A stretch of 64,000 nucleotides of DNA from Auanema rhodensis (Eukaryota; Animalia; Nematoda): assembly GCA_964057225.1 (NCBI GenBank), contig OZ059894.1, positions 6,510,001-6,574,000 of the forward strand, given 5' to 3'. Below, one piece after another: positions 22,967 to 64,000 of the stretch (its first letter is position 1; each line of letters opens with the position of its first letter). The notes under the pieces were generated by a model. It was not told where the DNA came from and made no database searches. It was given only the letters and a program-made list of their open reading frames with translations. Position numbers and translations under genes: made by a program.

Positions 22967-23521
22967 ATGCACTTATTCCCAGTATTAATCCCTTTTCACT
23001 TTTTCATTTTATATTTGGTTTTGATATCTAATTGAAACCTCTTATCAGGGCCAAGTAACTTAACAAGTGATAATTGTCCTGCCAATCAAACTTTCACTCA
23101 ATGTTCGTTAATGTGCCCCAAGAAGTGTTCAGAAAATGCGATCTTATCGAAAGGGAAAAAGAAAAAATAACATTTTTTAGTCAAATATAGGCATATGCAG
23201 CAATGTGTGGACCTCCAGCTTGCCAATGTAACATTGGATATGGTCTTAATGCTCAAAGTAAATGTATTTTGCAGAGTAATTGTCCACGAAATATTGAATT
23301 GCGTAAAATGTTTTACAGAATATTATATAATTTTAATACACAACATTTAAGCGAAAGTACTACCTGTTTCAAATAAATGTGCTCTTGTGGACTGTCGATT
23401 CGGTATGGTTTGTCGCTTGAATACTCAAGGTCTTGCTGAATGTGTTGATCCTCCTTCTGCAATTAGTTGTGCAAGCTTCCTTTGTGTACAAGGAATAACC
23501 TGTCGTACGAACGGCACTTGA
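22967..23521 (+). pseudogene. TIL domain plus FOLN-like Cys-repeat gene, probably decayed or truncated
   Basis: CPANQTFTQCSLMCPKKC...CSNVCGPPACQCNIGYGLNAQSKCILQSNC, then CALVDCRFGMVCRLNTQGLAECV and an incomplete CASFLCVQGITC repeat. An in-frame TAA (23056-58) precedes the TIL domain, one intron needs a GC donor (~23138), and the frame stops beside a transposon fragment. Confidence 0.65.
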
Positions 23522-23524
23522 GTC

Positions 23525-23679
23525 TTTTGAGAACTTTTACTACCGAATTGATAACGATACAGCAAGTTTTCAAATTTATATTCTAAACAGGGGTACACAC
23601 CGTGCTTAGAAGGCCCAATGAGAGCGGTGTAGAAGATAGGACTTGTAAATTGCGAAGAAAAAGAACAAGTAGGAGAGGG
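23525..23679 (-). mobile_element. Internal fragment of a MULE transposase gene related to the element at 52388-55050
   Basis: The reverse complement aligns to ~53282-53436 at roughly 85% identity, including an exact match to ACCCCTGTTTAGAATATAAATTTGAAAACTTGCTGTATCG. Confidence 0.92.
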
Positions 23680-44800: not shown

Positions 44801-46928
44801 AAAAACGTAAAACGTATTCCGTTGCGGGGAATCGAACCCCGGCCTTATGGGTGAGAGCCATAAATCCTAACCACTAGACCACAACGGATGTGATAGCTAA
44901 GCATCTTGAACCTTCAATAAGCAGTCATTGCGTTTGCATTATGGCCAATGAAATTTAATTCGTAGATCATTCGCAATGTTCTTGAAAACGTTGAGCATTG
45001 TTGTTGCCTAAGAATCAAGGTATGATTCAGTTATGGAACTTCAGAAGTAGCTTAATCTTTTAAAAACTTGAAGAAAAACGTAAAACGTATTCCGTTGCGG
45101 GGAATCGAACCCCGGCCTTATGGGTGAGAGCCATAAATCCTAACCACTAGACCACAACGGATGTGATAGCTAAGCATCTTGAACCTTCAATAAGCAGTCA
45201 TTGCGTTTGCATTATGGCCAATGAAATTTAATTCGTAGATCATTCGCAATGTTCTTGAAAACGTTGAGCATTGTTGTTGCCTAAGAATCAAGGTATGATT
45301 CAGTTATGGAACTTCAGAAGTAGCTTAATCTTTTAAAAACTTGAAGAAAAACGTAAAACGTATTCCGTTGCGGGGAATCGAACCCCGGCCTTATGGGTGA
45401 GAGCCATAAATCCTAACCACTAGACCACAACGGATGTGATAGCTAAGCATCTTGAACCTTCAATAAGCAGTCATTGCGTTTGCATTATGACCAATGAAAT
45501 TCACTTCGTAGATCATTCGCAATGTTCTTGAAAACGTTGAGCATTGTTGTTGCCTAAGAATCAAGGTATGATTCAGTTATGGAACTTCAGAAGTAGCTTA
45601 ATCTTTTAAAAACTTGAAGAAAAACGTAAAACGTATTCCGTTGCGGGGAATCGAACCCCGGCCTTATGGGTGAGAGCCTTAAATCCTAACCACTAGACCA
45701 CAACGGATGTGATAGCTAAGCATCTTGAACCTTCAATAAGCAGTCATTGCGTTTGCATTATGACCAATGAAATTCACTTCGTAGATCATTCGCAATGTTC
45801 TTGAAAACGTTGAGCATTGTTGTTGCCTAAGAATCAAGGTATGATTCAGTTATGGAACTTCAGAAGTAGCTTAATCTTTTAAAAACTTGAAGAAAAACGT
45901 AAAACGTATTCCGTTGCGGGGAATCGAACCCCGGCCTTATGGGTGAGAGCCATAAATCCTAACCACTAGACCACAACGGATGTGATAGCTAAACATCTTG
46001 AACCTTCAATAATCAGTCATTGCGTTTGCATTATGGCCAATGAAATTCAATTCGTAGATCATTCGCAATGTTCTTGAAAACGTTGAGCATTGTTGTTGCC
46101 TAAGAATCAAGGTATGATTCAGTGCAGCTTAATCTTTTAAAAACTTGAAGAAAAACGTAAAACGTATTCCGTTGCGGGGAATCGAACCCCGGCCTTATGG
46201 GTGAGAGCCATAAATCCTAACCACTAGACCACAACGGATGTGATAGCTAAGCATCTTGAACCTTCAATAATCAGTCATTGCGTTTGCATTATGGCCAATG
46301 AAATTCAATTCGTAGATCATTCGCAATGTTCTTGAAAACGTTGAGCATTGTTGTTGCCTAAGAATCAAGGTATGATTCAGTTATGGAACTTCAGAAGTAG
46401 CTTAATCTTTTAAAAACTTGAAGAAAAACGTAAAACGTATTCCGTTGCGGGGAATCGAACCCCGGCCTTATGGGTGAGAGCCATAAATCCTAACCACTAG
46501 ACCACAACGGATGTGATAGCTAAGCATCTTGAACCTTCAATAAGCAGTCATTGCGTTTGCATTATGGCCAATGAAATTCACTTCGTGGATCATTCGCAAT
46601 GTTCTTGAAAACGTTGAGTATTGTTGTTGCCTAAGAATCAAGGTATGATTCAGTTATGGAACTTCAGAAGTAGCTTAATTTTTTAAAAACTTGAAGAAAA
46701 ACGTAAAACGTATTCCGTTGCGGGGAATCGAACCCCGGCCTTATGGGTGAGAGCCATAAATCCTAACCACTAGACCACAACGGATGTGATAGCTAAGCAT
46801 CTTGAACCTTCAATAATAAGTCATTGCGTTTGCATTATGGCCAATGAAATTCACTTCGTGGATCATTCGCAATGTTTTTGAAAACGTTGAGTATTGTTGT
46901 TGCCTAAGAAATAAAGGTATGATTCAGT

Positions 46929-49079
46929 TGGCTCTCACCCATAAGGCCGGGGTTCGATTCCCCGCAACGGAATACGTTTTACGCTTTCTTCAAGTTTTTA
47001 AATGCTCAAGCTACTTCTGAAGTTCCATAACTTAATCATACCTTGATTCTTAGGCAACAACAATGCTCAACGTTTTCAAGAACATTGCGAATGATCTACG
47101 AATTGAATTTCATTGGCCATAATGCAAACGCAATGACTGATTATTGAAGGTTCAAGATGCTTAGCTATCACATCCGTTGTGGTCTAGTGGTTAGGATTTA
47201 TGGCTCTCACCCATAAGGCCGGGGTTCGATTCCCCGCAACGGAATACGTTTTACGTTTTTCTTCAAGTTTTTAAAAGATTAAGCTACTTCTGAAGTTCCA
47301 TAACTGAATCATACCTTGATTCTTAGGCAACAACAATGCTCAACGTTTTCAAGAACATTGCGAATGATCTACGAATTGAATTTCATTGGCCATAATGCAA
47401 ACGCAATGACTGCTTATTGAAGGTTCAAGATGCTTAGCTATCACATCCGTTGTGGTCTAGTGGTTAGGATTTATGGCTCTCACCCATAAGGCCGGGGTTC
47501 GATTCCCCGCAACGGAATACGTTTTACGTTTTTCTTCAAGTTTTTAAAAGATTAAGCTACTTCTGAAGTTCCATAACTGAATCATACCTTGATTCTTAGG
47601 CAACAACAATGCTCAACGTTTTCAAGAACATTGCGAATGATCCACGAATTGAATTTCATTGGCCATAATGCAAACGCAATGACTGATTATTGAAGGTTCA
47701 AGATGCTTAGCTATCACATCCGTTGTGGTCTAGTGGTTAGGATTTATGGCTCTCACCCATAAGGCCGGGGTTCGATTCCCCGCAACGGAATACGTTTTAC
47801 GTTTTTCTTCAAGTTTTTAAAAGATTAAGCTACTTCTGAAGTTCCATAACTGAATCATACCTTGATTCTTAGGCTACAACAATACTCAACGTTTTCAAGA
47901 ACATTGCGAATGATCTACGAATTGAATTTCATTGGCCATAATGCAAACGCAATGACTGCTTATTGAAGGTTCAAGATGCTTAGCTATCACATCCGTTGTG
48001 GTCTAGTGGTTAGGATTTATGGCTCTCACCCATAAGGCCGGGGTTCGATTCCCCGCAACGGAATACGTTTTACGTTTTTCTTCCAGTTTTTAAAAGATTA
48101 AGCTACTTCTGAAGTTCCATAACTGAATCATACCTTGATTCTTAGGCAACAACAATGCTCAACGTTTTCAAGAACATTGCGAATGATCTACGAATTGAAT
48201 TTCATAGGCCATAATGCAAACGCAATGACTGATTATTGAAGGTTCAAGATGCTTAGCTATCACATCCGTTGTGGTCTAGTGGTTAGGATTTATGGCTCTC
48301 ACCCATAAGGCCGGGGTTCGATTCCCCGCAACGGAATACGTTTTACGTTTTTCTTCAAGTTTTTAAAAGATTAAGCTACTTCTGAAGTTCCATAACTGAA
48401 TCATACCTTGATTCTTAGGCAACAACAATGCTCAACGTTTTCAAGAACATTGCGAATGATCTACGAATTGAATTTCATTGGCCATAATGCAAACGCAATG
48501 ACTGATTATTGAAGGTTCAAGATGCTCAGCTATCACATCCGTTGTGGTCTAGTGGTTAGGATTTATGGCTCTCACCCATAAGGCCGGGGTTCGATTCCCC
48601 GCAACGGAATACGTTTTACGTTTTTCTTCAAGTTTTTAAAAGATTAAGCTACTTCTGAAGTTCCATAACTGAATCATACCTTGATTCTTAGGCTACAACA
48701 ATACTCAACGTTTTCAAGAAAATTGCGAATGATCCACGAAGTGAATTTCATTGGCCATAATGCAAACGCAATGACTGATTATTGAAGGTTCAAGATGCTT
48801 AGCTATCACATCCGTTGTGGTCTAGTGGTTAGGATTTATGGCTCTCACCCATAAGGCCGGGGTTCGATTCCCCGCAACGGAATACTTTTTACGTTTTTCT
48901 TCAAGTTTTTAAAAGATTAAGCTACTGCTGAAGTTCCATAACTGAATCATACCTTGATTCTTAGGCTACAACAATGCTCAACGTTTTCAAGAACATTGCG
49001 AATGATCTACGAATTGAATTTCATTGGCCATAATGCAAACGCAATGACTGCTTATTGAAGGTTCAAGATGCTTAGCTAT
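46929..49079 (+). repeat. tRNA-Glu(CTC) array, block 2 (subfamily A, inverted): one 3' half-tRNA plus 7 full copies
   Basis: Full copies start at 47173, 47446, 47719, 47992, 48265, 48538 and 48811 (273-bp period). Confidence 0.97.
47173..47244 (+). tRNA. tRNA-Glu(CTC), representative of block 2
   Basis: Same 72-nt sequence on the + strand. Confidence 0.98.
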
Positions 49080-49480
49080 TGTTATACTTTATAATTCTTT
49101 ACTTTATTCTTTCTATAATTTTTATGTATTTCTTTATTCTGTGTTTTATATTTTATATTTTATAATTCTAGTTTCTTGTCTTAGTGTATTATGTTATCAG
49201 TTATATTTTGCAGCCTCAGCATTTTCTGAGATAGTTATAATTGTCATTGACAACTTATAACCTTTCGTGGAAAATGCTGATAACATTCGCTATATAAGCT
49301 TGCCATTCAACTGAATCTTCAGTTGGCGGATTTATCTTTATCTTTATTTGTTTATTGTTTAAATGTTTTTTATTTATAATAAATCTTTCTCTCTTCCTCA
49401 AATCTTATTGTTTCTTTTACAACACATCAATCTAAGGGTCAATAACATGGAACATTAATATCCAAATCAAGGATATTACA
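49080..49480 (+). mobile_element. 5' LTR of an LTR retrotransposon (401 bp)
   Basis: Starts TGTTATA exactly where the array stops and ends TATTACA. Contains TATATAA (49291) and AATAAA (49378), and is immediately followed by a PBS. Confidence 0.8.
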
Positions 49481-49493
49481 TGGAGGTTCCACC
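49481..49493 (+). other. Primer-binding site complementary to the tRNA-Gln 3' end
   Basis: TGGAGGTTCCACC is the reverse complement of GGTGGAACCT-CCA, the metazoan tRNA-Gln 3' terminus. Confidence 0.8.
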
Positions 49494-49724
49494 TTAGAAT
49501 CTTTTTACGATTTTCGAACTCGATTAAATTATGAATTATCATTCAGTTAAAGAGAATTTATTTTTTTTGAGCTATTTCCCTGGGCTACCACCTCTCTTTC
49601 CAATTCAGTACGAAGGGTCTCACTCTTTTTTTTAATAAACAGGGTTGATATTTTGCGCAGGGTGAGATACTGAATTGGCCAACTTTTCGATATTTTTGTT
49701 TCTGCGCAGTTGTATTTTTGATTT

Positions 49725-50919
49725 TACAATTGCAGCACATCAAGGAATCATTAAAACAAAAGAAGCAATTCTAAGAAGATTCTATTGGACAAATATGCAG
49801 AACGACATTACTATATTCATCAAGAACTGCATTAAATGTGCTCAAAGAAAAAAAGATCCACATTCCATGACGGTACAACCAATAGGTCATTTTGAGATAC
49901 CAAGCAAGCCATTTGAACGAGTCCACATGGACGTAATGGGACCATTTCCCCCTTCAAAAAGAAACTGTACCTACGTCATTACCATGCAAGACGCATTTAC
50001 AAAATGGTCAACAACAATTGCTGTACCACAAATAACAACGGAAATCACAATTGACCGATTTCTACGACTTTTCGTTTACATTTTTGGACCACCTCATCGC
50101 TTGATCACCGATAGAGGTTCGAACTTTGTATCCAAAAAGTTCGAAGAAATGTGTACTAAACTTGGAATCAAACATGAACCAACACTACCACACCAAAAGA
50201 ACTCAAATGGACAAGTGGAAAGACTTCACAGAACCCTCGAAGAAGGATTAACCCACTACTTAAAAGAGGACCTTAGTGACTGGGATACTGTATTACCAAA
50301 AATCACTTTTGCTATAAACAATATTCAGCACGCGACTACAGGGATTGCGCCATACATTGCATTATTTGGTAAAGAATGCAGAATGTCAATGGACGCTGAA
50401 TTACCAGAAACGATCACCAAAATTCAAGAAATTTCTGAAGAATTACTCCAAAGAAGACCAGATATGGACAAGAGAGACGAAATAATAAAGAACCGCATAG
50501 CTAAAAATCAAGAAAATGCGAAAAAGAAGAAGGATAGAACGCAAAGAGCACACCATAGAGACATTCAACCGGGCGACATGGTGATGACGACCATAAAATC
50601 ACACCAAATCGGCCAAAAGCTTCGGAAAAGCTATGATGGACCATACGAAGTCATCAACGTAGAAGGATCAAAAGTTCAAATCAGAAATTCATCAGGAAAA
50701 CTACAAGATATCCACAAAGATAACTTGAAAATCTTCTCTCCTGCTTCACAAAACATCTCTTACAACACTCGCGCAAGATTTCGAGAAAGTCAAGCAGAAG
50801 AAGATAGCGACATCGAAATAATAGAAGTGATCAACAGGAACAACAAAGATAGCATAGATACAGAGCCAGAAGATGAAAATGAAGACGAAATATGGCTTCC
50901 GAGGAATGAAAAAGAATAA
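49725..50919 (+). mobile_element. Ty3/gypsy-type integrase, 5'-truncated pol remnant (no gag, PR, RT or RH)
   Basis: Partial zinc finger HQG...FYW...CIKC, catalytic HMD...TDRG-x35-E (GQVER), GPY/F module (YDGPYEV) and acidic tail. No stops. The TTG start given in the ORF track lies in non-coding leader sequence. Confidence 0.93.
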
Positions 50920-51058
50920 CAACAAGATAATGCTACGTTATTCAAATTATTGTAACAAAATAACGATGAATTAGAAAAAAAAAATTTTATGCTAAATAAC
51001 ATTCAAAATAAAAATAGCATTTAATAGAGATTGAAAAAGGAAAAATAAGGCAAATTCT

Positions 51059-51332
51059 AAACGAGGAGATGTTATGACTAATGGTTCCAAGTTACCGTAA
51101 TCCTATGCGGACTAGAGGACATTTTGACAACCATCAGAGCTCCATGTGCCTCCTCAAATAAGATGAGATAAACACTGGTAGGCGTATAAACCACAATTTC
51201 ATCTTAAGTGGTAGTCTCCATTAGTAATCAAGGATTCACTCTGGGAGACATATGGAGACACATTATTAAATCATAATCTCGGTTCAATTTAGAAATGAGT
51301 ACTTCTTGAGACCATTAGTCAAAATAATAACA
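51059..51332 (+). mobile_element. Polypurine tract plus putative 3' LTR (51070-~51332) not matching the 5' LTR
   Basis: AAACGAGGAGA abuts TGTTATGACTAATGGT, with a complementary end ACCATTAGTC(AAAATA)ATAACA and TATAAA at ~51185. The right boundary is uncertain. Confidence 0.6.
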
Positions 51333-51984
51333 TATTCCCATTCATTACTAGACCCTTATTCTACAATCTCTATTAGGAAATGCTTCAATATTAAGAGAAT
51401 TAATTTATGAAATTAATAATATTCTAATTCATCGTTACTTTATATTATATCGAACCCTTCTTATAAATTATTGTAATTTTGTTTTTATACTAATTAAAAC
51501 TCTATCATACTATAGTTATTGTGAAGCTAAAACAATTGAACTCTAAAACTCAGTTACATATAAGCCCAAATTTTTGTTTAAAATATCGCGAGGTCGCGAC
51601 AATCTTTGAAAAAGGGCACGTTCCATTCGGAGACTCTATATATGTAACTGCAGGGTTAGAGCCAGACCGACTAGAGGAATGTGGAATGGCACCGCCTTCC
51701 CTCATGCCCCTATTCGGGAGTTCACCCCTTTGCAAGCCCATGGACGGTTTGTATCTAACTTAGTTAATCTTATATATTAGTCTTTGTCTTGTAAATGTAG
51801 TTTACTTTATCCTTGTGTTATTGTATTGTAATGATATTGTATTGTGTATAATAAACCTATATATTTCCTTATCTTATGTAATCCTTATGCTCTGTTTCCA
51901 TACCGCTACACTTATGGAATACTATACGCGTAGTTGAGCAGACTACAATGGTCTGTTCAATATACGTAGGAGCATAATGGAACG

Positions 51985-52387
51985 GTTGTTGCCTAAGAAT
52001 CAAGGTATGATTCAGTTATGGAACTTCAGAAGTAGCTTAATCTTTTAAAAACTTGAAGAAAAACGTAAAACGTATTCCGTTGCGGGGAATCGAACCCCGG
52101 CCTTATGGGTGAGAGCCATAAATCCTAACCACTAGACCACAACGGATGTGATAGCTAAGCATCTTGAACCTTCAATAATCAGTCATTGCGTTTGCATTAT
52201 GGCCAATGAAATTCAATTCGTAGATCATTCGCAATGTTCTTGATTCGCAATGTTCTTGAAAACGTTGAGCATTGTTGTAGCCTAAGAATCAAGGTATGAA
52301 TCAGTTATGGAACTTCAGAAGTAGCTTAATCTTTTAAAAACTTGAAGAAAAACGTAAAACGTATTCCGTAGCGGGGAATCGAACCCC
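51985..52387 (-). repeat. tRNA-Glu(CTC) array, block 3 (subfamily A): one full copy (52075-52146) and a 3' fragment cut by the MULE
   Basis: About 1.5 units in minus orientation, with a 16-bp local tandem duplication at ~52228-52259. Confidence 0.95.
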
Positions 52388-52735
52388 GGGTGGCGGACGT
52401 TTCGTCGTCTCTAGTTTGTGAACTAGTTCAGGCTGATCATTAGAGGGCAAACTTTATGATAATGTGCTGACAACTGTCAGTGTTCATGTAACTCGGGGTG
52501 CTATTAAAGCTATAAATCTATAGAAGTCAGATATAAGTGGCTACATACCTTGAAGTGCCATCAAAATATAAATTGAAAAAAGCAGAAATTAAAATAAACA
52601 TACAGTTCTATCAACCAGGCTATCATCAAACAGTTTCAAGTCAACAGTTACGTGAGTTCATAGTAATAGTTGTTAGTTCATCTTTTCTTTCGATAAGTTT
52701 GCTTATTCACACTTTCTCATCTTTTCTCGTTCATC

Positions 52736-54802
52736 ATGATTTTTCCTTCTACTTTCTGTCCATTTTCTCTGATGATTAACGCTCAGGGTAAATTTGTTCT
52801 TGTTTCTCAGCCTTTTGATAATGTTCCTTCGGAGAACATAACTATCTTTTTTAATAATTCTTCAGTAAATACTCAGAATCTTGAAGTTTATTCAAATGAT
52901 GTAACTTCACTCTCATTTTTGAATTTCACTCTTCCATCTTTTAATATCCCTCCATTGAGGCAGCAAAATGTTAATTTTGCTTCTGCTCTTTCTCTAGCAA
53001 ATTCATCTGCGGCATCTTCTTCAGTTGAATCTGTTGCTACAGTTACTGTTCCTACTGTCAACAGCGTTCCACTGTTCTCTTCTTCTACTTCACATCTTTC
53101 TATTCAGCCTTCTTCTTCTTCTTCTGCCGTTCATTCTTCACCGTCATCTTCTCTTTCTTCTTCTCCTCCTTCTGTTTCCTCTCCTTCTTTACCTGTTCTC
53201 TCTCCTTCTTCTTCTGTTCCCTCTCCTTCTTCTTCTGTTCCCTCTCCTTCTTCTTCTGTTCCCTCTCCTTCTTCTTCTGTTCCCTCTCCTTCTTCTTCAT
53301 TTTCTTTGCAATCTGCAAATCCTAACTCATACGCCGCTCTCATTGCGCCTTCTAAGCAGGATGTACACCCCTGTTTAGAATATAAATTTGAAAACTTGCT
53401 GTATCGCTACCAATTCAGTAGTAAAAGTTCTCAAAAAGCTTATTCTATTTATCGTTGCACAGGTTGTAAACATTTGGGTAAATACACTTCTATCAAAGTA
53501 GAAAATAATGTATTTCTCGAAAATCCTGTTGCTCAAAACCATCATTGTGATCCATTTTTGTTTTCTATTAACAAATGCAAAAATATCACATACTCTCTAA
53601 CTCAGAATATTAAAAGTTCAGACTCATGTTTTGAGATGAAAGCATATTCCTTATTTGTCAATGAAATAAAAAAAATATTTCATGAATCTGAGTTAGAAGA
53701 GCATGAAAAGCAAGAAGTTTCCTCTGCTTGGTTTCATGGTGGCTATGACAGTAGACGTAGAGCTATTACAAGGGCTTTAAGTTCTCGTAAAGACTTAAGA
53801 ACATCCATGACCAATGTTCCTCTGTCTCTGTCTAAAACTATCAATGGTCGTACGTTCTTGCATTTTCATGACAGCGAGTTTCATTTGTATTTCGATACAT
53901 TTTGTTTGGAACTAGCTGTTCAGAATGGTTTAACTCATTTGCTTGGGGACGGTTGTTTCAAATACCAGCCTTTGGATATGGAACAAGCATATACCATCAT
54001 GGGCGGTTGCAGAAATGGAACAACTGTACCTCTTTTCTATTCCATTTTAAAAAATAAGAGTAGGTTCACTTATAGAAGGCTTCTTCAACATATTGCACTA
54101 GCTCTCTCCAACGTTGGTTGCATAGTTGAAAACCTTATTTTTATCTGTGATTTTGAGATCGCTGTAATAAGGGAAGCTGAAACTATTTTTAATTCTGGTC
54201 AAGGATGTGCATTTCATTATGCTCAGAGCTTGAACAGACGGTTTCTTCAACTGGGTTTGACACAAGCAGAGAAGCAATCCATTGAAATCAAACAATGGCA
54301 TGGTCGGCTGCTGGGCTTGCTCTTCCTTCAAACTGATCTTGTCTCACGGTCCGGGTTACTCAATTCTCCTGTTTCTTCTGATCATCCATCATATTCTTCT
54401 TGTCTTCAAATGATCAGTTATGTGAATGAAACATGGATTGAAGGACCTTTGCGACATTATTGGAGCAAATGGGACATAAAACAGTTTCGTACATCTAATA
54501 ATGTTGAATCTTTTCACCGTAAAATGAAGACTATTTTATCTTGCTCTCATCCTCCTCTTTCTGAATTAATTACTTTTTTTCATGGTGAAAATTTGATGGC
54601 TAATCATGTCCTGATCGCTTTGTCATCGAATGTTGAGCCTGCCAGGAAAAAAAGAAAAAACGTAATTGAGAGGCAACAACGGATTGAGGTTCAGTTTGAA
54701 AACTTTAGGAGCATCTCCAATAACCGACTGCCTAATCAGCAAGAAATAATAGCATATGTCGAGGAGATGGCGAAGTTTAACACCAGAAAATCTTATTTTT
54801 GA
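52736..54802 (+). CDS. MULE-type DDE transposase (688 aa) with a Ser/Pro-rich N-terminal extension
   Basis: Zn-finger-like YRCTGC...NHHC, D1 in LGDGCFK, D2 in ICDFEIA, CxxH motif GCAFHY, E in RTSNNVESFH, and NLS-like RKKRK. The ORF is uninterrupted. Confidence 0.93.
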   Translation: MIFPSTFCPFSLMINAQGKFVLVSQPFDNVPSENITIFFNNSSVNTQNLEVYSNDVTSLSFLNFTLPSFNIPPLRQQNVNFASALSLANSSAASSSVESVATVTVPTVNSVPLFSSSTSHLSIQPSSSSSAVHSSPSSSLSSSPPSVSSPSLPVLSPSSSVPSPSSSVPSPSSSVPSPSSSVPSPSSSFSLQSANPNSYAALIAPSKQDVHPCLEYKFENLLYRYQFSSKSSQKAYSIYRCTGCKHLGKYTSIKVENNVFLENPVAQNHHCDPFLFSINKCKNITYSLTQNIKSSDSCFEMKAYSLFVNEIKKIFHESELEEHEKQEVSSAWFHGGYDSRRRAITRALSSRKDLRTSMTNVPLSLSKTINGRTFLHFHDSEFHLYFDTFCLELAVQNGLTHLLGDGCFKYQPLDMEQAYTIMGGCRNGTTVPLFYSILKNKSRFTYRRLLQHIALALSNVGCIVENLIFICDFEIAVIREAETIFNSGQGCAFHYAQSLNRRFLQLGLTQAEKQSIEIKQWHGRLLGLLFLQTDLVSRSGLLNSPVSSDHPSYSSCLQMISYVNETWIEGPLRHYWSKWDIKQFRTSNNVESFHRKMKTILSCSHPPLSELITFFHGENLMANHVLIALSSNVEPARKKRKNVIERQQRIEVQFENFRSISNNRLPNQQEIIAYVEEMAKFNTRKSYF
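53200..53297 (+). repeat. 21-bp in-frame minisatellite (SPSSSVP) in the transposase
   Basis: CTCTCCTTCTTCTTCTGTTCC, four copies plus a partial copy. Confidence 0.95.
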
Positions 54803-55050
54803 ATCATTTAACTTGAAAAACTAAACTCTAATAAATTTTTTGAATCATATCTTTTTTTTCTAACACAAAAACCTCCTTGCCGTTTAGATTGAAAACCTTG
54901 ATTTTTTATGAACTGTTTAAGTTTTTGGGTAATTTTTAGAAGTCTAAACGACCAAAAACTGAGAGTACAACACGTGTGGTATAATTTACGATCGTTAGGC
55001 TTGCTGGGGAGAGGTTGTAAAAATAGGAGACGACGAAACGTCTCAGACCC

Positions 55051-58000
55051 TTCGATTCCCCGCAACGGAATACGTTTTACGCTGTCTTCAAGTTTTTAAA
55101 TGATCAAGCTACTTCTGAAGTTCCATAACTTAATCATAGATTGATTCTTAGCAACAACAATACTCCACGTTTTCAAGCGCATTTTGAATGATCCACGAAT
55201 TGAATTTCATTGGTCATCATGTAAACGCAATGACTGATTATTAAAGGTTCAAGATATGTCGATATCATATCCGTTGTGGTCTAGTGGTTAGGATTTATGG
55301 CTCTCACCCATAAGGCCGGGGTTCGATTCCCCGCAACGGAATACGTTTTACGCTGTCTTCAAGTTTTTAAATGATCAAGCTACTTCTGAAGTTCCATAAC
55401 TTAATCATAGATTGATTCTTAGCAACAACAATACTCCACGTTTTCAAGCGCATTTTGAATGATCCACGAATTGAATTTCATTGGTCATCATGTAAACGCA
55501 ATGACTGATTATTAAAGGTTCAAGATATGTCGATATCATATCCGTTGTGGTCTAGTGGTTAGGATTTATGGCTCTCACCCATAAGGCCGGGGTTCGATTC
55601 CCCGCAACGGAATACGTTTTACGCTGTCTTCAAGTTTTTAAATGATCAAGCTACTTCTGAAGTTCCATAACTTAATCATAGATTGATTCTTAGCAACAAC
55701 AATACTCCACGTTTTCAAGCGCATTTTGAATGATCCACGAATTGAATTTCATTGGTCATCATGTAAACGCAATGACTGATTATTAAAGGTTCAAGATATG
55801 TCGATATCATATCCGTTGTGGTCTAGTGGTTAGGATTTATGGCTCTCACCCATAAGGCCGGGGTTCGATTCCCCGCAACGGAATACGTTTTACGCTGTCT
55901 TCAAGTTTTTAAATGATCAAGCTACTTCTGAAGTTCCATAACTTAATCATAGATTGATTCTTAGCAACAACAATACTCCACGTTTTCAAGCGCATTTTGA
56001 ATGATCCACGAATTGAATTTCATTGGTCATCATGTAAACGCAATGACTGATTATTAAAGGTTCAAGATATGTCGATATCATATCCGTTGTGGTCTAGTGG
56101 TTAGGATTTATGGCTCTCACCCATAAGGCCGGGGTTCGATTCCCCGCAACGGAATACGTTTTACGCTTTCTTCAAGTTTTTAAATGCTCAAGCTACTTCT
56201 GAAGTTCCATAACTTAATCATAGATTGATTCTTAGCAACAACAATACTCCACGTTTTCAAGCGCATTTTGAATAATCCACGAATTGAATTTCATTGGTCA
56301 TCATGTAAACGCAATAACTGATTATTAAAGGTTCAAGATATGTCGATATCATATCCGTTGTGGTCTAGTGGTTAGGATTTATGGCTCTCACCCATAAGGC
56401 CGGGGTTCGATTCCCCGCAACGGAATACGTTTTACGCTGTCTTCAAGTTTTTAAATGATCAAGCTACTTCTGAAGTTCCATACCTTAATCATAGATTGAT
56501 TCTTAGCAACAACAATACTCCACGTTTTCAAGCGCATTTTGAATAATCCACGAATTGAATTGCATTGGTCATCATGTAAATGCAATGACTGATTATTAAA
56601 GGTTTAAGTTATGTCGATATCATATCCGTTGTGGTCTAGTGGTTAGGATTTATGGCTCTCACCCATAAGGCCTGGGTTCGATTCCCCGCAACGGAATACG
56701 TTTTACGATTTCTTCAAGTTTTTAAATGCTCAAGCTACTTCTGAAGTTCCATAACTTAATCATACCTTGATTCCTAGGCAACAACAATACTCCACGTTTT
56801 CAAGCGCATTTTGAATGATCCACGAATTGAATTTCATTGGTCATCATGTAAACGCAATGACTGATTATTAAAGGTTTAAGTTATGTCGATATCATATCCG
56901 TTGTGGTCTAGTGATTAGGATTTATGGCTCTCACCCATAAGGCCTGGGTTCGATTCCCCGCAACGGAATACGTTTTACGATTTCTTCAAGTTTTTAAATG
57001 CTCAAGCTACTTCTGAAGTTCCATAACTTAATCATACCTTGATTCTTAGGCAACAACAATACTCCACGTTTTCAAGCGCATTTTGAATAATCCACGAATT
57101 GAATTTCATTGGTCATCATGTAAATGCAATGACTGATTATTAAAGGTTTAAGTTATGTCGATATCATATCCGTTGTGGTCTAGTGGTTAGGATTTATGGC
57201 TCTCACCCATAAGGCCGGGGTTCGATTCCCCGCAACGGAATACGTTTTACGATTTCTTCAAGTTTTTAAATGCTCAAGCTACTTCTGAAGTTCCATAACT
57301 TAATCATACCTTGATTCTTAGGCAACAACAATACTCCACGTTTTCAAGCGCATTTTGAATGATCCACGAATTGAATTTCATTGGTCATCATGTAAACGCA
57401 ATGACTGATTATTAAAGGTTCAAGATATGTCGATATCATATCCGTTGTGGTCTAGTGGTTAGGATTTATGGCTCTCACCCATAAGGCCGGGGTTCGATTC
57501 CCCGCAACGGAAAACGTTTTACGCTTTCTTCAAGTTTTTAAATGCTCAAGCTACTTCTGAAGTTCCATAACTTAATCATAGATTGATTCTTAGCAACAAC
57601 AATACTCCACGTTTTCAAGCGCATTTTGAATGATCCACGAATTGAATTTCATTGGTCATCATGTAAAAGCAATGACTGATTATTAAAGGTTCAAGATATG
57701 TCGATATTATATCCGTTGTGGTCTACTGATTAGGATTTATGGCTCTCACCCATAAGGCCGGGGTTCGATTCCCCGCAACGGAATACGTTTTACGCTGTCT
57801 TCAAGTTTTTAAATGATCAAGCTACTTCTGAAGTTCCATAACTTAATCATACCTTGATTCTTAGCAACAACAATACTCCACGTTTTCAAGCGCATTTTGA
57901 ATGATCCACGAATTGAATTTCATTGGTCATCATGTAAACGCAATGACTGATTATTAAAGGTTCAAGATATGTCGATATTATATCCGTTGTGGTCTAGTGG

Positions 58001-61000
58001 TTAGGATTTATGGCTCTCACCCATAAGGCCGGGGTTCGATTCCCCGCAACGGAATACGTTTTACGCTGTCTTCAAGTTTTTAAATGATCAAGCTACTTCT
58101 GAAGTTCCATAACTTAATCATACCTTGATTCTTAGCAACAACAATACTCCACGTTTTCAAGCGCATTTTGAATGATCCACGAATTGAATTTCATTGGTCA
58201 TCATGTAAATGCAATGACTGATTATTAAAGGTTCAAGATATGTCGATATTATATCCGTTGTGGTCTAGTGGTTAGGATTTATGGCTCTCACCCATAAGGC
58301 CGGGGTTCGATTCCCCGCAACGGAAAACGTTTTACGCTTTCTTCAAGTTTTTAAATGCTCAAGCTACTTCTGAAGTTCCATAACTTAATCATAGATTGAT
58401 TCTTAGCAACAACAATACTCCACGTTTTCAAGCGCATTTTGAATGATCCACGAATTGAATTTCATTGGTCATCATGTAAATGCAATGACTGATTATTAAA
58501 GGTTCAAGATATGTCGATATCATATCCGTTGTGGTCTAGTGGTTAGGATTTATGGCTCTCACCCATAAGGCCGGGGTTCGATTCCCCGCAACGGAAAACG
58601 TTTTACGCTTTCTTCAAGTTTTTAAATGCTCAAGCTACTTCTGAAGTTCCATAACTTAATCATAGATTGATTCTTAGCAACAACAATACTCCACGTTTTC
58701 AAGCGCATTTTGAATGATCCACGAATTGAATTTCATTGGTCATCATGTAAATGCAATGACTGATTATTAAAGGTTCAAGATATGTCGATATTATATCCGT
58801 TGTGGTCTAGTGGTTAGGATTTATGGCTCTCACCCATAAGGCCGGGGTTCGATTCCCCGCAACGGAATACGTTTTACGCTGTCTTCAAGTTTTTAAATGA
58901 TCAAGCTACTTCTGAAGTTCCATAACTTAATCATAGATTGATTCTTAGCAACAACAATACTCCACGTTTTCAAGCGCATTTTGAATGATCCACGAATTGA
59001 ATTTCATTGGTCATCATGTAAACGCAATGACTGATTATTAAAGGTTCAAGATATGTCGATATCATATCCGTTGTGGTCTAGTGGTTAGGATTTATGGCTC
59101 TCACCCATAAGGCCGGGGTTCGATTCCCCGCAACGGAATACGTTTTACGCTTTCTTCAAGTTTTTAAATGCTCAAGCTACTTCTGAAGTTCCATAACTTA
59201 ATCATAGATTGATTCTTAGGCAACAACAATACTCCACGTTTTCAAGCGCATTTTGAATGATCCACGAATTGAATTTCATTGGTCATCATGTAAACGCAAT
59301 GACTGATTATTAAAGGTTCAAGTTATGACGATATCATATCCGTTGTGGTCTAGTGGTTAGGATTTATGGCTCTCACCCATAAGGCCGGGGTTCGATTCCC
59401 CGCAACGGAATACGTTTTACGCTTTCTTCAAGTTTTTAAATGCTCAAGCTACTTCTGAAGTTCCATAACTTAATCATAGATTGATTCTTAGCAACAACAA
59501 TACTCCACGTTTTCAAGCGCATTTTGAATGATCCACGAATTGAATTTCATTGGTCATCATGTAAACGCAATGACTGATTATTAAAGGTTCAAGATATGTC
59601 GATATCATATCCGTTGTGGTCTAGTGGTTAGGATTTATGGCTCTCACCCATAAGGCCGGGGTTCGATTCCCCGCAACGGAATACGTTTTACGCTTTCTTC
59701 AAGTTTTTAAATGCTCAAGCTACTTCTGAAGTTCCATAACTTAATCATAGATTGATTCTTAGCAACAACAATACTCCACGTTTTCAAGCGCATTTTGAAT
59801 GATCCACGAATTGAATTTCATTGGTCATCATGTAAACGCAATGACTGATTATTAAAGGTTCAAGTTATGACGATATCATATCCGTTGTGGTCTAGTGGTT
59901 AGGACTTATGGCTCTCACCCATAAGGCCGGGGTTCGATTCCCCGCAACGGAATACGTTTTACGCTTTCTTCAAGTTTTTAAATGCTCAAGCTACTTCTGA
60001 AGTTCCATAACTTAATCATAGATTGATTCTTAGGCAACAACAATACTCCACGTTTTCAAGCGCATTTTGAATGATCCACGAATTGAATTTCATTGGTCAT
60101 CATGTAAACGCAATGACTGATTATTAAAGGTTCAAGATATGTCGATATCATATCCGTTGTGGTCTAGTGGTTAGGATTTATGGCTCTCACCCATAAGGCC
60201 GGGGTTCGATTCCCCGCAACGGAATACGTTTTACGCTTTCTTCAAGTTTTTAAATGCTCAAGCTACTTCTGAAGTTCCATAACTTAATCATAGATTGATT
60301 CTTAGCAACAACAATACTCCACGTTTTCAAGCGCATTTTGAATGATCCACGAATTGAATTTCATTGGTCATCATGTAAACGCAATGACTGATTATTAAAG
60401 GTTCAAGATATGTCGATATCATATCCGTTGTGGTCTAGTGGTTAGGATTTATGGCTCTCACCCATAAGGCCGGGGTTCGATTCCCCGCAACGGAATACGT
60501 TTTACGCTTTCTTCAAGTTTTTAAATGCTCAAGCTACTTCTGAAGTTCCATAACTTAATCATAGATTGATTCTTAGCAACAACAATACTCCACGTTTTCA
60601 AGCGCATTTTGAATGATCCACGAATTGAATTTCATTGGTCATCATGTAAACGCAATGACTGATTATTAAAGGTTCAAGTTATGTCGATATCATATCCGTT
60701 GTGGTCTAGTGGTTAGGATTTATGGCTCTCACCCATAAGGCCGGGGTTCGATTCCCCGCAACGGAATACGTTTTACGCTTTCTTCAAGTTTTTAAATGCT
60801 CAAGCTACTTCTGAAGTTCCATAACTTAATCATAGATTGATTCTTAGCAACAACAATACTCCACGTTTTCAAGCGCATTTTGAATGATCCACGAATTGAA
60901 TTTCATTGGTCATCATGTAAACGCAATGACTGATTATTAAAGGTTCAAGATATGTCGATATCATATCCGTTGTGGTCTAGTGGTTAGGATTTATGGCTCT

Positions 61001-64000
61001 CACCCATAAGGCCGGGGTTCGATTCCCCGCAACGGAATACGTTTTACGCTTTCTTCAAGTTTTTAAATGCTCAAGCTACTTCTGAAGTTCCATAACTTAA
61101 TCATAGATTGATTCTTAGCAACAACAATACTCCACGTTTTCAAGCGCATTTTGAATGATCCACGAATTGAATTTCATTGGTCATCATGTAAACGCAATGA
61201 CTGATTATTAAAGGTTCAAGATATGTCGATATCATATCCGTTGTGGTCTAGTGGTTAGGATTTATGGCTCTCACCCATAAGGCCGGGGTTCGATTCCCCG
61301 CAACGGAATACGTTTTACGCTTTCTTCAAGTTTTTAAATGCTCAAGCTACTTCTGAAGTTCCATAACTTAATCATAGATTGATTCTTAGCAACAACAATA
61401 CTCCACGTTTTCAAGCGCATTTTGAATGATCCACGAATTGAATTTCATTGGTCATCATGTAAACGCAATGACTGATTATTAAAGGTTCAAGTTATGACGA
61501 TATCATATCCGTTGTGGTCTAGTGGTTAGGATTTATGGCTCTCACCCATAAGGCCGGGGTTCGATTCCCCGCAACGGAAAACGTTTTACGCTTTCTTCAA
61601 GTTTTTAAATGCTCAAGCTACTTCTGAAGTTCCATAACTTAATCATACCTTGATTCTTAGCAACAACAATACTCCACGTTTTCAAGCGCATTTTGAATGA
61701 TCCACGAATTGAATTTCTTTGGTCATCATGTAAACGCAATGACTGATTATTAAAGGTTCAAGTTATGACGATATCATATCCGTTGTGGTCTAGTGGTTAG
61801 GATTTATGGCTCTCACCCATAAGGCCGGGGTTCGATTCCCCGCAACGGAATACGTTTTACGCTTTCTTCAAGTTTTTAAATGATCAAGCTACTTCTGAAG
61901 TTCCATAACTTAATCATACCTTGATTCTTAGCAACAACAATACTCCACGTTTTCAAGCGCATTTTGAATGATCCACGAATTGAATTTCATTGGTCATCAT
62001 GTAAATGCAATGACTGATTATTAAAGGTTCAAGATATGTCGATATCATATCCGTTGTGGTCTAGTGGTTAGGATTTATGGCTCTCACCCATAAGGCCGGG
62101 GTTCGATTCCCCGCAACGGAATATGTTTTACGCTTTCTTCATGTTTTTAAATGCTCAAGCTACTTCTGAAGTTCCATAACTTAATCATACCTTGATTCTT
62201 AGGCAACAACAATACTCCACGTTTTCAAGCGCATTTTGAATGATCCACGAATTGAATTTCATTGGTCATCATGTAAACGCAATGACTGATTAATAAAGGT
62301 TCAAGTTATGTCGATATCATATCCGTTGTGGTCTAGTGGTTAGGATTTATGGCTCTCACCCATAAGGCCGGGGTTCGATTCCCCGCAACGGAATATGTTT
62401 TACGCTTTCTTCAAGTTTTTAAATGCTCAAGCTACTTCTGAAGTTCCATAACTTAATCATAGATTGATTCTTAGCAACAACAATACTCCACGTTTTCAAG
62501 CGCATTTTGAATGATCCACGATTTGAACTTCATTGGTCATCATGTAAACGCAATGACTGATTATTAAAGGTTCAAGTTATGTCGATATCATATCCGTTGT
62601 GGTCTAGTGGTTAGGATTTATGGCTCTCACCCATAAGGCCGGGGTTCGATTCCCCGCAACGGAATACGTTTTACGCTTTCTTCAAGTTTTTAAATGCTCA
62701 AGCTACTTCTAAAGTTCCATAACTTAATCATAGATTGATTCTTAGCAACAACAATACTCCACGTTTTCAAGCGCATTTTGAATGATCCACGAATTGAATT
62801 TCATTGGTCATCATGTAAACGCAATGACTGATTATTAAAGGTTCAAGATATGTCGATATCATATCCGTTGTGGTCTAGTGGTTAGGATTTATGGCTCTCA
62901 CCCATAAGGCCGGGGTTCGATTCCCCGCAACGGAATACGTTTTACGCTGTCTTCAAGTTTTTAAATGCTCAAGCTACTTCTGAAGTTCCATAACTTAATC
63001 ATAGATTGATTCTTAGGCAACAACAATACTCCACGTTTTCAAGCGCATTTTGAATAATCCACGAATTGAATTTCATTGGTCATCATGTAAACGCAATAAC
63101 TGATTATTAAAGGTTCAAGATATGTCGATATCATATCCGTTGTGGTCTAGTGGTTAGGATTTATGGCTCTCACCCATAAGGCCGGGGTTCGATTCCCCGC
63201 AACGGAATACGTTTTACGCTGTCTTCAAGTTTTTAAATGCTCAAGCTACTTCTGAAGTTCCATAACTTAATCATAGATTGATTCTTAGCAACAACAATAC
63301 TCCACGTTTTCAAGCGCATTTTGAATGATCCACGATTTGAACTTCATTGGTCATCATGTAAACGCAATGACTGATTATGAAAGGTTCAAGTTATGTCGAT
63401 ATCATATCCGTTGTGGTCTAGTGGTTAGGATTTATGGCTCTCACCCATAAGGCCGGGGTTCGATTCCCCGCAACGGAATACGTTTTACGCTGTCTTCAAG
63501 TTTTTAAATGCTCAAGCTACTTCTGAAGTTCCATAACTTAATCATAGATTGATTCTTAGCAACAACAATACTCCACGTTTTCAAGCGCATTTTGAATGAT
63601 CCACGATTTGAACTTCATTGGTCATCATGTAAACGCAATAACTGATTATTAAAGGTTCAAGATATGTCGATATCATATCCGTTGTGGTCTAGTGGTTAGG
63701 ATTTATGGCTCTCACCCATAAGGCCGGGGTTCGATTCCCCGCAACGGAATACGTTTTACGCTGTCTTCAAGTTTTTAAATGCTCAAGCTACTTCTGAAGT
63801 TCCATAACTTAATCATAGATTGATTCTTAGCAACAACAATACTCCACGTTTTCAAGCGCATTTTGAATGATCCACGATTTGAACTTCATTGGTCATCATG
63901 TAAACGCAATGACTGATTATGAAAGGTTCAAGTTATGTCGATATCATATCCGTTGTGGTCTAGTGGTTAGGATTTATGGCTCTCACCCATAAGGCCGGGG
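55051..64000 (+). repeat. tRNA-Glu(CTC) array, block 4 (spacer subfamily B): 3' fragment, 32 full copies and one copy cut by the window end; 271/272-bp units
   Basis: Copies start at 55270, 55541 ... 63678, 63949. Diagnostic 5' flank GATATGTCGATATCATA. Confidence 0.98.
55270..55341 (+). tRNA. tRNA-Glu(CTC), representative of block 4
   Basis: 72-nt sequence identical to the block 1 consensus. Confidence 0.98.

What the first reader, a model, noticed from the sequence alone, without database searches (positions are those of the whole stretch)
52364..55070. Intact MULE with both ends joined to tRNA T-arm/B-box sequence: candidate tRNA-targeting Mutator family
Seen: the left flank is the last 24 nt of a minus-strand tRNA (...GGAATCGAACCCC|GGGT) and the right flank is the last 20 nt of a plus-strand tRNA (ACCC|TTCGATTCCCC...). 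The two junctions are in different, oppositely oriented copies, yet fall only 4 nt apart on a ~272-bp unit. There is no true TSD, but the 10-bp flanks ATCGAACCCC and TTCGATTCCC match at 7/10 because the T-arm is quasi-palindromic. Known: MULEs make 9-11 bp TSDs and are usually not site-specific; small-RNA-gene targeting among DNA transposons is known for Dada. Inference: two independent target choices in the B-box suggest sequence- or TFIIIC-guided targeting, and the intact DDE ORF suggests recent activity.
Basis: partly seen in the sequence, partly recalled or inferred. Interest (0 to 1): 0.9.

Follow-up and report, generated by a model that had tools for sequence, protein, structure and literature searches.

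The report
Mutator transposon landing in Pol III genes
A small, intact Mutator-type jumping gene in a nematode sits with both tips inside the same short stretch of tRNA-Glu genes, and contigs from related genomes show its tips against another tRNA-Glu, an initiator tRNA and a 5S rRNA gene, so the family probably aims at RNA polymerase III genes, which I found no report of for this superfamily.

Summary
A 2,663-bp element (52388-55050) has 24-bp inverted ends (20/24) and an intact 688-aa Mutator-type transposase. Its catalytic D405, D472, E591 and C491xxH494 are all present.

**The two flanks**
- Each tip abuts the T-arm of a truncated tRNA-Glu(CTC) gene, 4 nt apart in gene coordinates.
- The flanks are inverted, not direct, and there is no target-site duplication.
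- They come from two spacer subfamilies: A-type on the left, B-type on the right.
- So they record two separate strand-transfer events, later joined by recombination between copies, or by an assembly join inside the element.

**Other copies**
- Assembled contigs of four public runs end at exactly the same tips with other flanks.
- These flanks are the T-arm of another tRNA-Glu-like gene, the first 23 nt of an initiator-like tRNA, a 5S rRNA gene, and one unrecognised sequence.
- Five of six junctions therefore lie inside Pol III genes (p about 0.006 even if insertion were random within such arrays).
- The sites are not one fixed position, so strict B-box specificity is not upheld.

The mechanism (a Pol III factor tether, or a GC-rich/open-DNA preference) is unresolved. 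The element is a MULE, not a Dada. The scan's unchecked notes on other DNA of this genome report similar MULE-in-tRNA cases. New variant of a known kind.

The parts
52365..52387 (-). Truncated 3' part (gene nt 49-71) of a tRNA-Glu(CTC) gene belonging to an A-type array unit. It abuts the left tip of the element.
   Evidence: The 230-nt flank has 3 mismatches to the A-type consensus and 19 to the B-type.
52388..55050 (+). The complete MULE, 2,663 bp.
   Evidence: The tips are defined by three different flanks on each side (window plus contigs of runs X1 and X4). The TIR core is unique in the window.
52388..52411 (+). Left terminal inverted repeat, 24 nt.
   Evidence: 20/24 against the right end.
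52736..54802 (+). Transposase ORF of 688 aa without introns. The N-terminal roughly 200 aa are rich in Ser and Pro. It has a CCHC finger (C241, C244, H269, C271) and a DDE core (D405, D472, C491xxH494, E591).
53147..53298 (+). 21-bp tandem repeat (7.2 copies) inside the ORF. It encodes the Ser/Pro-rich low-complexity stretch.
55027..55050 (-). Right terminal inverted repeat, 24 nt.
55051..55069 (+). Truncated 3' part (gene nt 53-71) of a tRNA-Glu(CTC) gene belonging to a B-type array unit. It abuts the right tip of the element.
   Evidence: 99.1% to the B-type consensus, 89% to the A-type.
23496..23679 (-). Relic of an older copy of the same MULE lineage. It is an internal piece corresponding to 53282-53436, with 87.7% nucleotide identity and 70% amino-acid identity. 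It forms the left edge of the whole tRNA array.

Best explanation
This is a low-copy, probably autonomous Mutator-like DNA transposon whose family inserts preferentially inside genes transcribed by RNA polymerase III (tRNAs and 5S rRNA), near their internal promoter boxes.

**The window copy**
- Each tip was joined by the transposase to the T-arm of a tRNA-Glu(CTC) gene, at gene nt 49 and gene nt 53.
- The two joins were made in two different array subfamilies and in opposite orientation.
- The present copy is therefore a recombinant of two insertions. Homologous exchange between two inverted copies flipped the array, or an aberrant or alternative transposition did the same. This is why the flanks are inverted and no duplication is visible.

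**Most likely mechanism (inferred, not shown)**
- The transposase complex is drawn to Pol III genes through a bound factor such as TFIIIC.
- The scatter of a few nucleotides and the range of target genes look like tethering rather than sequence reading.
- The lineage-specific Ser/Pro-rich N-terminus is the candidate contact.

**Shown**
- The anatomy of the element, its exact tips and an intact catalytic core.
- The two subfamilies of the flanks.
- Pol III gene sequence at 5 of 6 junctions.

**Inferred**
- The recombination history.
- The tether.
- Current activity.
For: **The element**
- Anatomy and tips.
- MULE homology: Pfam MULE at E = 2e-5. The best relatives, at E = 4e-65 to 1e-40, carry PF10551 above its cut-off.
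- D, D, E and CxxH are invariant in alignment A1.

**The flanks in the window**
- The left flank is A-type and the right flank is B-type.

**Junctions in contigs of other runs, at the same tips**
- Run X4, right tip: followed by GGGTTCGATTCCCGGCATGGGAA. This has an exact B-box consensus plus a Glu-type acceptor.
- Run X1, left tip: preceded by AGCAGCGTGGCGCAGTGGAAGCG. This has the A-box consensus and an initiator-type 5' end.
- Run X4, left tip: preceded by the reverse complement of ATCCCGTCCGATCTGGCAAGTCAAGCAA. This fits the Rfam 5S consensus at about positions 37-58.

**Statistics and context**
- 5 of 6 junctions lie in Pol III gene bodies. The tRNA is only 26% of an array unit, giving a binomial p = 0.0056. 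The p-value is far smaller against a genome-wide share.
- A second, older relic of the lineage bounds the same array.
- Different left flanks in organisms A and B at about 99.6% identity imply recent movement.
- Unchecked notes of this scan report MULEs in tRNA-Arg, tRNA-Ser (two copies) and at a tRNA 5' end elsewhere in this genome.
Against: - Only six junctions are available, taken from the 24 of 238 loose ends that the tool shows.
- One junction (TTTCAGAGTACTTTCGAATAACGC...) is not a recognisable Pol III gene.
- The sites are not at one position: tRNA gene nt 49, 50 and 53, tRNA nt 23, and 5S at about nt 32-37.
- The initiator-tRNA identity rests on my knowledge of tRNA consensus, not on a tool.
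- The window's own two junctions were not seen in the read-derived contigs shown. An assembly join inside the 2.7-kb repeat therefore cannot be excluded. This would not change the two target choices.
- tRNA genes are the only GC-rich 9-mers in the unit, so a plain GC or open-DNA preference could mimic targeting.
- The five nearest relatives (about 30% identity) lie nowhere near tRNA genes.
- No factor interaction has been tested.
Confidence: 0.6

Rival explanations
1. The element has a target preference but no Pol III factor is involved. Like other Mutator elements, the transposase prefers GC-rich, nucleosome-poor or bendable DNA, or a loose motif such as GGAA(T/G)CG. In this AT-rich genome, tRNA and 5S gene bodies are simply the best such sites.
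For: - In the 273-bp unit, all 9-mers with 6 or more G+C lie inside the tRNA, and the T-arm is the richest part.
- The candidate 9-nt targets at five of the six junctions have 4 to 6 G+C out of 9, against a unit mean of 3.6.
- GGAATCG or GGAAGCG lies just outside the tip at four junctions.
- Preference of Mu-type elements for GC-rich, open 5' regions is established knowledge for plants.
Against: - The window's right-hand site, TTCGATTCC, has only average GC (4/9; half of all windows are as rich).
- The sixth junction is AT-rich.
- Three hits within 5 nt of one another in two different Glu tRNAs is tighter than GC content alone predicts.
Confidence: 0.25
2. There is no targeting. Insertion is random, and only copies in redundant tandem arrays survive selection in a compact genome. 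The closeness of the two junctions is chance.
For: - Arrays are neutral landing pads. An LTR element also sits in this array.
- Two sites within 4 nt of each other has a chance probability of about 3%, which is not negligible.
Against: - Selection cannot favour gene bodies over spacers within an array, yet 5 of 6 junctions are in gene bodies (p = 0.0056).
- The targets include four different Pol III genes in different genomes.
Confidence: 0.08
3. A single insertion went into a pre-existing head-to-head junction of the two arrays, and its duplication was later eroded. Alternatively, the inverted arrangement is purely an assembly chimera of two ordinary insertions.
For: - Other orientation switches exist in the array without this element: at 46927 and at 49080-51985.
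- The window's junctions were not visible among the contigs shown.
- The 10-nt flanks match at 7/10.
Against: - A 7/10 match is what T-arm symmetry gives without any duplication.
- A young element with an intact ORF should keep a perfect duplication.
- A pre-existing junction placed exactly in the T-arm on both sides would itself need explaining.
- The chimera version leaves the two independent T-arm target choices intact.
Confidence: 0.12

Closest known systems
Mutator-like elements (MuDR/MULE superfamily; Pfam PF10551 transposases)
   Same: - Transposase homology.
- DDE triad with the CxxH signature.
- An N-terminal zinc finger.
- Terminal inverted repeats that begin with G-rich tips.
   Different: - MULEs are not known, in any paper I could find, to insert into tRNA or 5S genes.
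- This family has short 24-bp ends.
- The nearest relatives found are only about 33% identical and are not near tRNA genes.
Dada DNA transposons (Kojima and Jurka 2013, PMC3706591; PMC8869645)
   Same: - DNA transposons that land inside multicopy small RNA genes, including tRNAs.
- A DDE transposase with a C/DxxH motif.
- The same survival logic of hitting redundant genes.
   Different: - Dada elements are 4.7-11 kb and most contain introns. Their transposases (1,402 aa in Dada-U6_DR) carry CCCC and C-terminal CCHC fingers and have no BLAST similarity to other transposases.
- Dada makes 6-7-bp duplications.
- Each Dada family hits one fixed sequence, for example tRNA nt 8-13.
- This element is 2.66 kb, encodes 688 aa, is clearly MULE-like, and hits several genes at several positions.
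Pol III-gene-targeting retrotransposons (yeast Ty1/Ty3, Dictyostelium TRE5/TRE3 and DGLT-A; review PMC5911963)
   Same: - Targeting of many different Pol III genes rather than one sequence.
- A scatter of a few nucleotides, as expected for tethering to the Pol III machinery.
   Different: - They are retroelements with integrase or endonuclease.
- They insert upstream or downstream of the gene, not inside it.
- They have no sequence relationship to this element.
Pokey (piggyBac element in Daphnia 28S rDNA)
   Same: A cut-and-paste DNA transposon with a preferred site in a multicopy RNA gene.
   Different: - A different superfamily.
- The target is transcribed by Pol I.
- It uses a single TTAA site.

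Membership tests
MULE / Mutator superfamily | Transposase homologous to the MULE domain (PF10551) | tested here: met
   The protein's own Pfam hit has E = 2e-5 and 25.4 bits, just under the 27.6-bit cut-off. Its relatives, at E = 4e-65 to 1e-40, score above the cut-off.
MULE / Mutator superfamily | DDE catalytic triad with a C/DxxH signature after the second D | tested here: met
   D405, D472, C491xxH494 and E591 are all present. All are invariant in alignment A1 except D472, which is conserved in 7 of 8 sequences.
MULE / Mutator superfamily | Terminal inverted repeats at exact element ends | tested here: met
   The ends are 24 nt and match at 20/24. The tips are confirmed by three different flanks on each side.
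MULE / Mutator superfamily | Target-site duplication of 9-11 bp | tested here: inconclusive
   The flanks are inverted and come from two different units, so no duplication can be read. A 9-bp duplication is reported only in an unchecked note.
MULE / Mutator superfamily | N-terminal zinc-finger DNA-binding domain | tested here: met
   The CCHC pattern C241, C244, H269, C271 is conserved in the relatives that cover this region. There is a weak PF23674 hit at E = 0.018.
Dada superfamily | Element of 4.7-11 kb whose transposase (1,402 aa in Dada-U6_DR) has an N-terminal CCCC finger and a C-terminal CCHC finger (PMC3706591) | tested here: not met
   This element is 2,663 bp with a 688-aa protein. 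It has no C-terminal CCHC finger.
Dada superfamily | One fixed target sequence per family, with a 6-7-bp duplication | tested here: not met
   The junctions lie at tRNA gene nt 49, 50 and 53, at tRNA nt 23, and in 5S rRNA. The duplication length is unreadable.
Pol III-gene-targeting mobile elements (functional class, not a lineage) | Insertions concentrated at Pol III genes of several kinds | tested here: met
   5 of 6 junctions lie in tRNA-Glu(CTC), a second tRNA-Glu-like gene, an initiator-like tRNA and 5S rRNA. The sample is small.
Pol III-gene-targeting mobile elements (functional class, not a lineage) | Physical tether of the integration machinery to TFIIIC, TFIIIB or Pol III | not testable with these tools
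   This needs interaction and transposition assays.

The most novel reading that the evidence does not exclude
A lineage of Mutator transposons has evolved a tether to the Pol III transcription apparatus. It inserts inside the A-box and B-box regions of any Pol III gene (tRNAs, 5S). Recombination between its copies then flips, bounds and perhaps seeds the giant tRNA and 5S-derived arrays of this nematode genome. It would be the first DNA transposon with factor-guided rather than sequence-guided Pol III targeting.
Probability: 0.3. Interest if true: 0.85.

Novelty: new variant of a known kind. Interest (0 to 1): 0.65.

Why it matters
Targeting of Pol III genes is a classic example of convergent 'safe-harbour' evolution. 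Until now it has been known for retrotransposons (Ty1, Ty3, Dictyostelium elements), and among DNA transposons only for the sequence-specific Dada superfamily.

- **A third route.** A compact, intronless Mutator transposase with the same habit in an animal would be a third, independent route to this behaviour.
- **A tractable system.** A single 688-aa protein and 24-bp ends would make it possible to ask how a DDE transposase is steered to tRNA genes.
- **Possible use.** It is a possible scaffold for safe-site DNA delivery.
- **Genome evolution.** It would tie transposon activity to the inversions and borders of the unusually large tRNA arrays of this genome.

Tried and rejected
- **Word-indexed protein search** with residues 210-688 found nothing.
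- **Exact-protein look-ups** of the ORF and of P0002 found nothing. No further copies could be fetched as DNA this way.
- **Metagenome scan** with the 16-nt TIR core returned 120 loci. None has any further similarity to the element, so all are chance hits.
- **Search of earlier notes by sequence** was blank.
- **Solved structures:** no relative found.
- **Dada membership** was considered and rejected on size, protein architecture and lack of a fixed target.
- **The X4 left flank** was first read as a tRNA T-loop. This was rejected in favour of 5S rRNA after comparison with the Rfam 5S consensus.
- **A true but eroded duplication** (7/10) was rejected, because the T-arm's own symmetry produces that match.
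- **Synonymous versus non-synonymous counts** among copy variants gave no clear signal.
- **A phylogeny against named MuDR, Phantom and Dada references** was not built. No reference sequences were available from the tools, and I did not type any from memory.
Full report
**Setting**

The window holds a very large tandem array of tRNA-Glu(CTC) genes. There are 127 complete genes on units of 258-273 bp. Notes from other windows describe the genome as a nematode's.

The array changes orientation several times:
- minus strand from 23680 to about 46927;
- plus strand to 49080;
- an LTR-retroelement fragment with an integrase ORF, 49080-51985;
- one and a half minus-strand units to 52387;
- the element under study, 52388-55050;
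- plus strand to the end of the window.

**The element**

The ends are 24-nt inverted repeats that match at 20 of 24. Their 16-nt core occurs nowhere else in the window.

A single uninterrupted ORF, 52736-54802, encodes 688 aa. Its parts are as follows.
- The first 200 or so residues are Ser/Pro-rich low complexity, partly encoded by a 21-bp tandem repeat.
- A CCHC zinc finger follows.
- Then comes a region that hits Pfam MULE at E = 2e-5, just under the curated cut-off.

An exhaustive HMMER search found 2,670 relatives. The best is at E = 4e-65 but only about 33% identity. These relatives carry PF10551 above its cut-off. In the alignment the catalytic D405, D472 and E591 and the C491xxH494 signature are all present. 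It is therefore an intact Mutator-like element. It is not a Dada: Dada elements are 4.7-11 kb, their transposases (1,402 aa in Dada-U6_DR) have other zinc fingers and no BLAST similarity to other transposases, and they make 6-7-bp duplications.

**The junctions in the window**

The left tip abuts 23 nt of a minus-strand tRNA-Glu 3' part. The right tip abuts 19 nt of a plus-strand 3' part. In gene coordinates these flanks start at nt 49 and nt 53.

The flanks are inverted relative to each other, which no single insertion can produce. The 7/10 match of the 10-nt flanks is what the T-arm's own symmetry gives.

The 230 nt on the left belong to the A-type spacer subfamily: 3 mismatches, against 19 to the B-type. 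The 230 nt on the right belong to the B-type: 99.1%, against 89% to the A-type.

So the two tip-to-target joins were made in different units of different subarrays, and both fell in the T-arm. The simplest history is as follows:
- two insertions in opposite orientation;
- then exchange between the two copies, which inverts what lies between them;
- this leaves one copy flanked by two 3' parts and a reciprocal copy flanked by two 5' parts. The reciprocal copy is not in the window.

An aberrant one-ended or alternative transposition gives the same picture. So does an assembly join inside this 2.7-kb repeat. In every version the two T-arm joins are separate transposase events. The neighbouring LTR fragment shows the same signature: different unit positions on its two sides, at an orientation switch. 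TE-mediated inversion therefore seems general in this array.

**Other copies**

Four public runs that hold the element at near identity were laid on it as assembled contigs. Contigs stop matching at exactly 52388 and 55050, which confirms the tips. They continue into other flanks:

| Run | Tip | Flank | Reading |
|---|---|---|---|
| X4 | right | GGGTTCGATTCCCGGCATGGGAA | exact B-box consensus plus a Glu-type acceptor stem, so the T-arm of another tRNA-Glu-like gene, starting 1 nt from the window's left site |
| X1 | left | AGCAGCGTGGCGCAGTGGAAGCG | the first 23 nt of an initiator-type tRNA with a perfect A-box (my reading from tRNA consensus) |
| X4 | left | reverse complement of ATCCCGTCCGATCTGGCAAGTCAAGCAA | matches the Rfam 5S consensus around positions 37-58 |
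| X1 and X4 | right | TTTCAGAGTACTTTCGAATAACGC... | not recognised |

Five of six junctions are thus inside Pol III gene bodies.
- Even if insertion were confined to arrays like this one, where the gene is 26% of the unit, the binomial probability is 0.0056.
- Against any realistic genome-wide share it is far smaller.
- Survival of insertions in redundant arrays cannot explain a bias for gene bodies over spacers.

Depth ratios suggest only a few copies per genome, so the sample cannot be much larger in any one strain. Different left flanks in organisms A and B at about 99.6% identity point to recent movement. The window copy itself differs from the majority sequence at eight fixed sites. Five of these change an amino acid, including G488, where both the majority and the wider family have V. 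It may therefore not be the active master copy.

**What the data do not show**

- The sites are not one position and not only the B-box.
- tRNA genes hold all the GC-rich 9-mers of the unit. A Mutator-like preference for GC-rich, open DNA is therefore a serious rival to a tether to TFIIIC or another Pol III factor. The window's right-hand site has only average GC.
- The five nearest relatives found, in two other animal assemblies, have no tRNA gene or B-box at their flanks. The habit looks specific to this lineage.
- Only 24 of 238 loose ends were shown by the reads tool.
- The window's own junctions were not among the contigs listed.

**Association with the array**

A 184-bp internal relic of an older copy of the same lineage forms the very left edge of the array, joined to spacer sequence by a non-TIR break. 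It is 87.7% identical in nucleotides, 70% in amino acids, and lies on the minus strand. The lineage has thus been in this array more than once.

**Earlier notes of this scan**

Unchecked first-reader notes on other pieces of the same genome report:
- an intact MULE inside a tRNA-Arg gene;
- two copies at one position of the tRNA-Ser B-box;
- one at a tRNA 5' end;
- a MULE-tRNA units-MULE composite with a 9-bp duplication.

I could not read those stretches. They are leads that agree with this report, not support for it. The scan has thus met this phenomenon before on other DNA.

**Literature**

Full-text searches found no report of a tRNA-targeting or Pol III-targeting Mutator element. The 2022 Dada paper lists Pokey, CryptonV and Dada as the target-specific eukaryotic DNA transposons.

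**Verdict**

- It is a new variant of a known kind.
- Interest is 0.65.

Noticed in passing
window 23496-23679: An internal 184-bp relic of an older copy of the same MULE lineage (minus strand, 87.7% nucleotide identity). It is joined directly to array spacer and forms the left border of the whole tRNA array. To its left lies unique sequence that reads like Cys-rich coding exons.
   Followed up: partly
window 49080-51985: An LTR-retroelement fragment with a 414-aa integrase-containing ORF (49675-50919) sits at another orientation switch. Its left end lies 4 bp upstream of a tRNA start position. Its right end lies at a different unit position. This is the same two-site signature as the MULE.
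   Followed up: partly
window 46920-46935: An orientation switch with no transposon. Minus-strand spacer (...ggtatgattcagtt) is joined directly to nt 31 of a plus-strand tRNA (ggctctcaccc...).
   Followed up: no
window 23680-46930 and 55051-64000: There are two spacer subfamilies (A and B) about 9% apart, while the tRNA consensus is identical. Within A, units of 273 and 258 bp differ by a 15-bp duplication (ttcgcaatgttcttg).
   Followed up: partly
run X4 contig at the left tip: The MULE tip abuts 5S rRNA starting at about nt 32-37. Unchecked notes of this scan describe satellites in this genome whose monomer carries exactly 5S nt 1-33, or a split 5S gene. A MULE-made break in 5S could be their origin. 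This is a lead only.
   Followed up: no
window 52391-52396: The left end reads GGGTGGCGGACG where the right end reads GGGTCTGAGACG. The TGGCGG resembles tRNA nt 8-13 (the start of the A box). TGGCGG is also the very hexamer that the Dada paper (PMC8869645) says often replaces Dada-tY target duplications. This may be coincidence.
   Followed up: no
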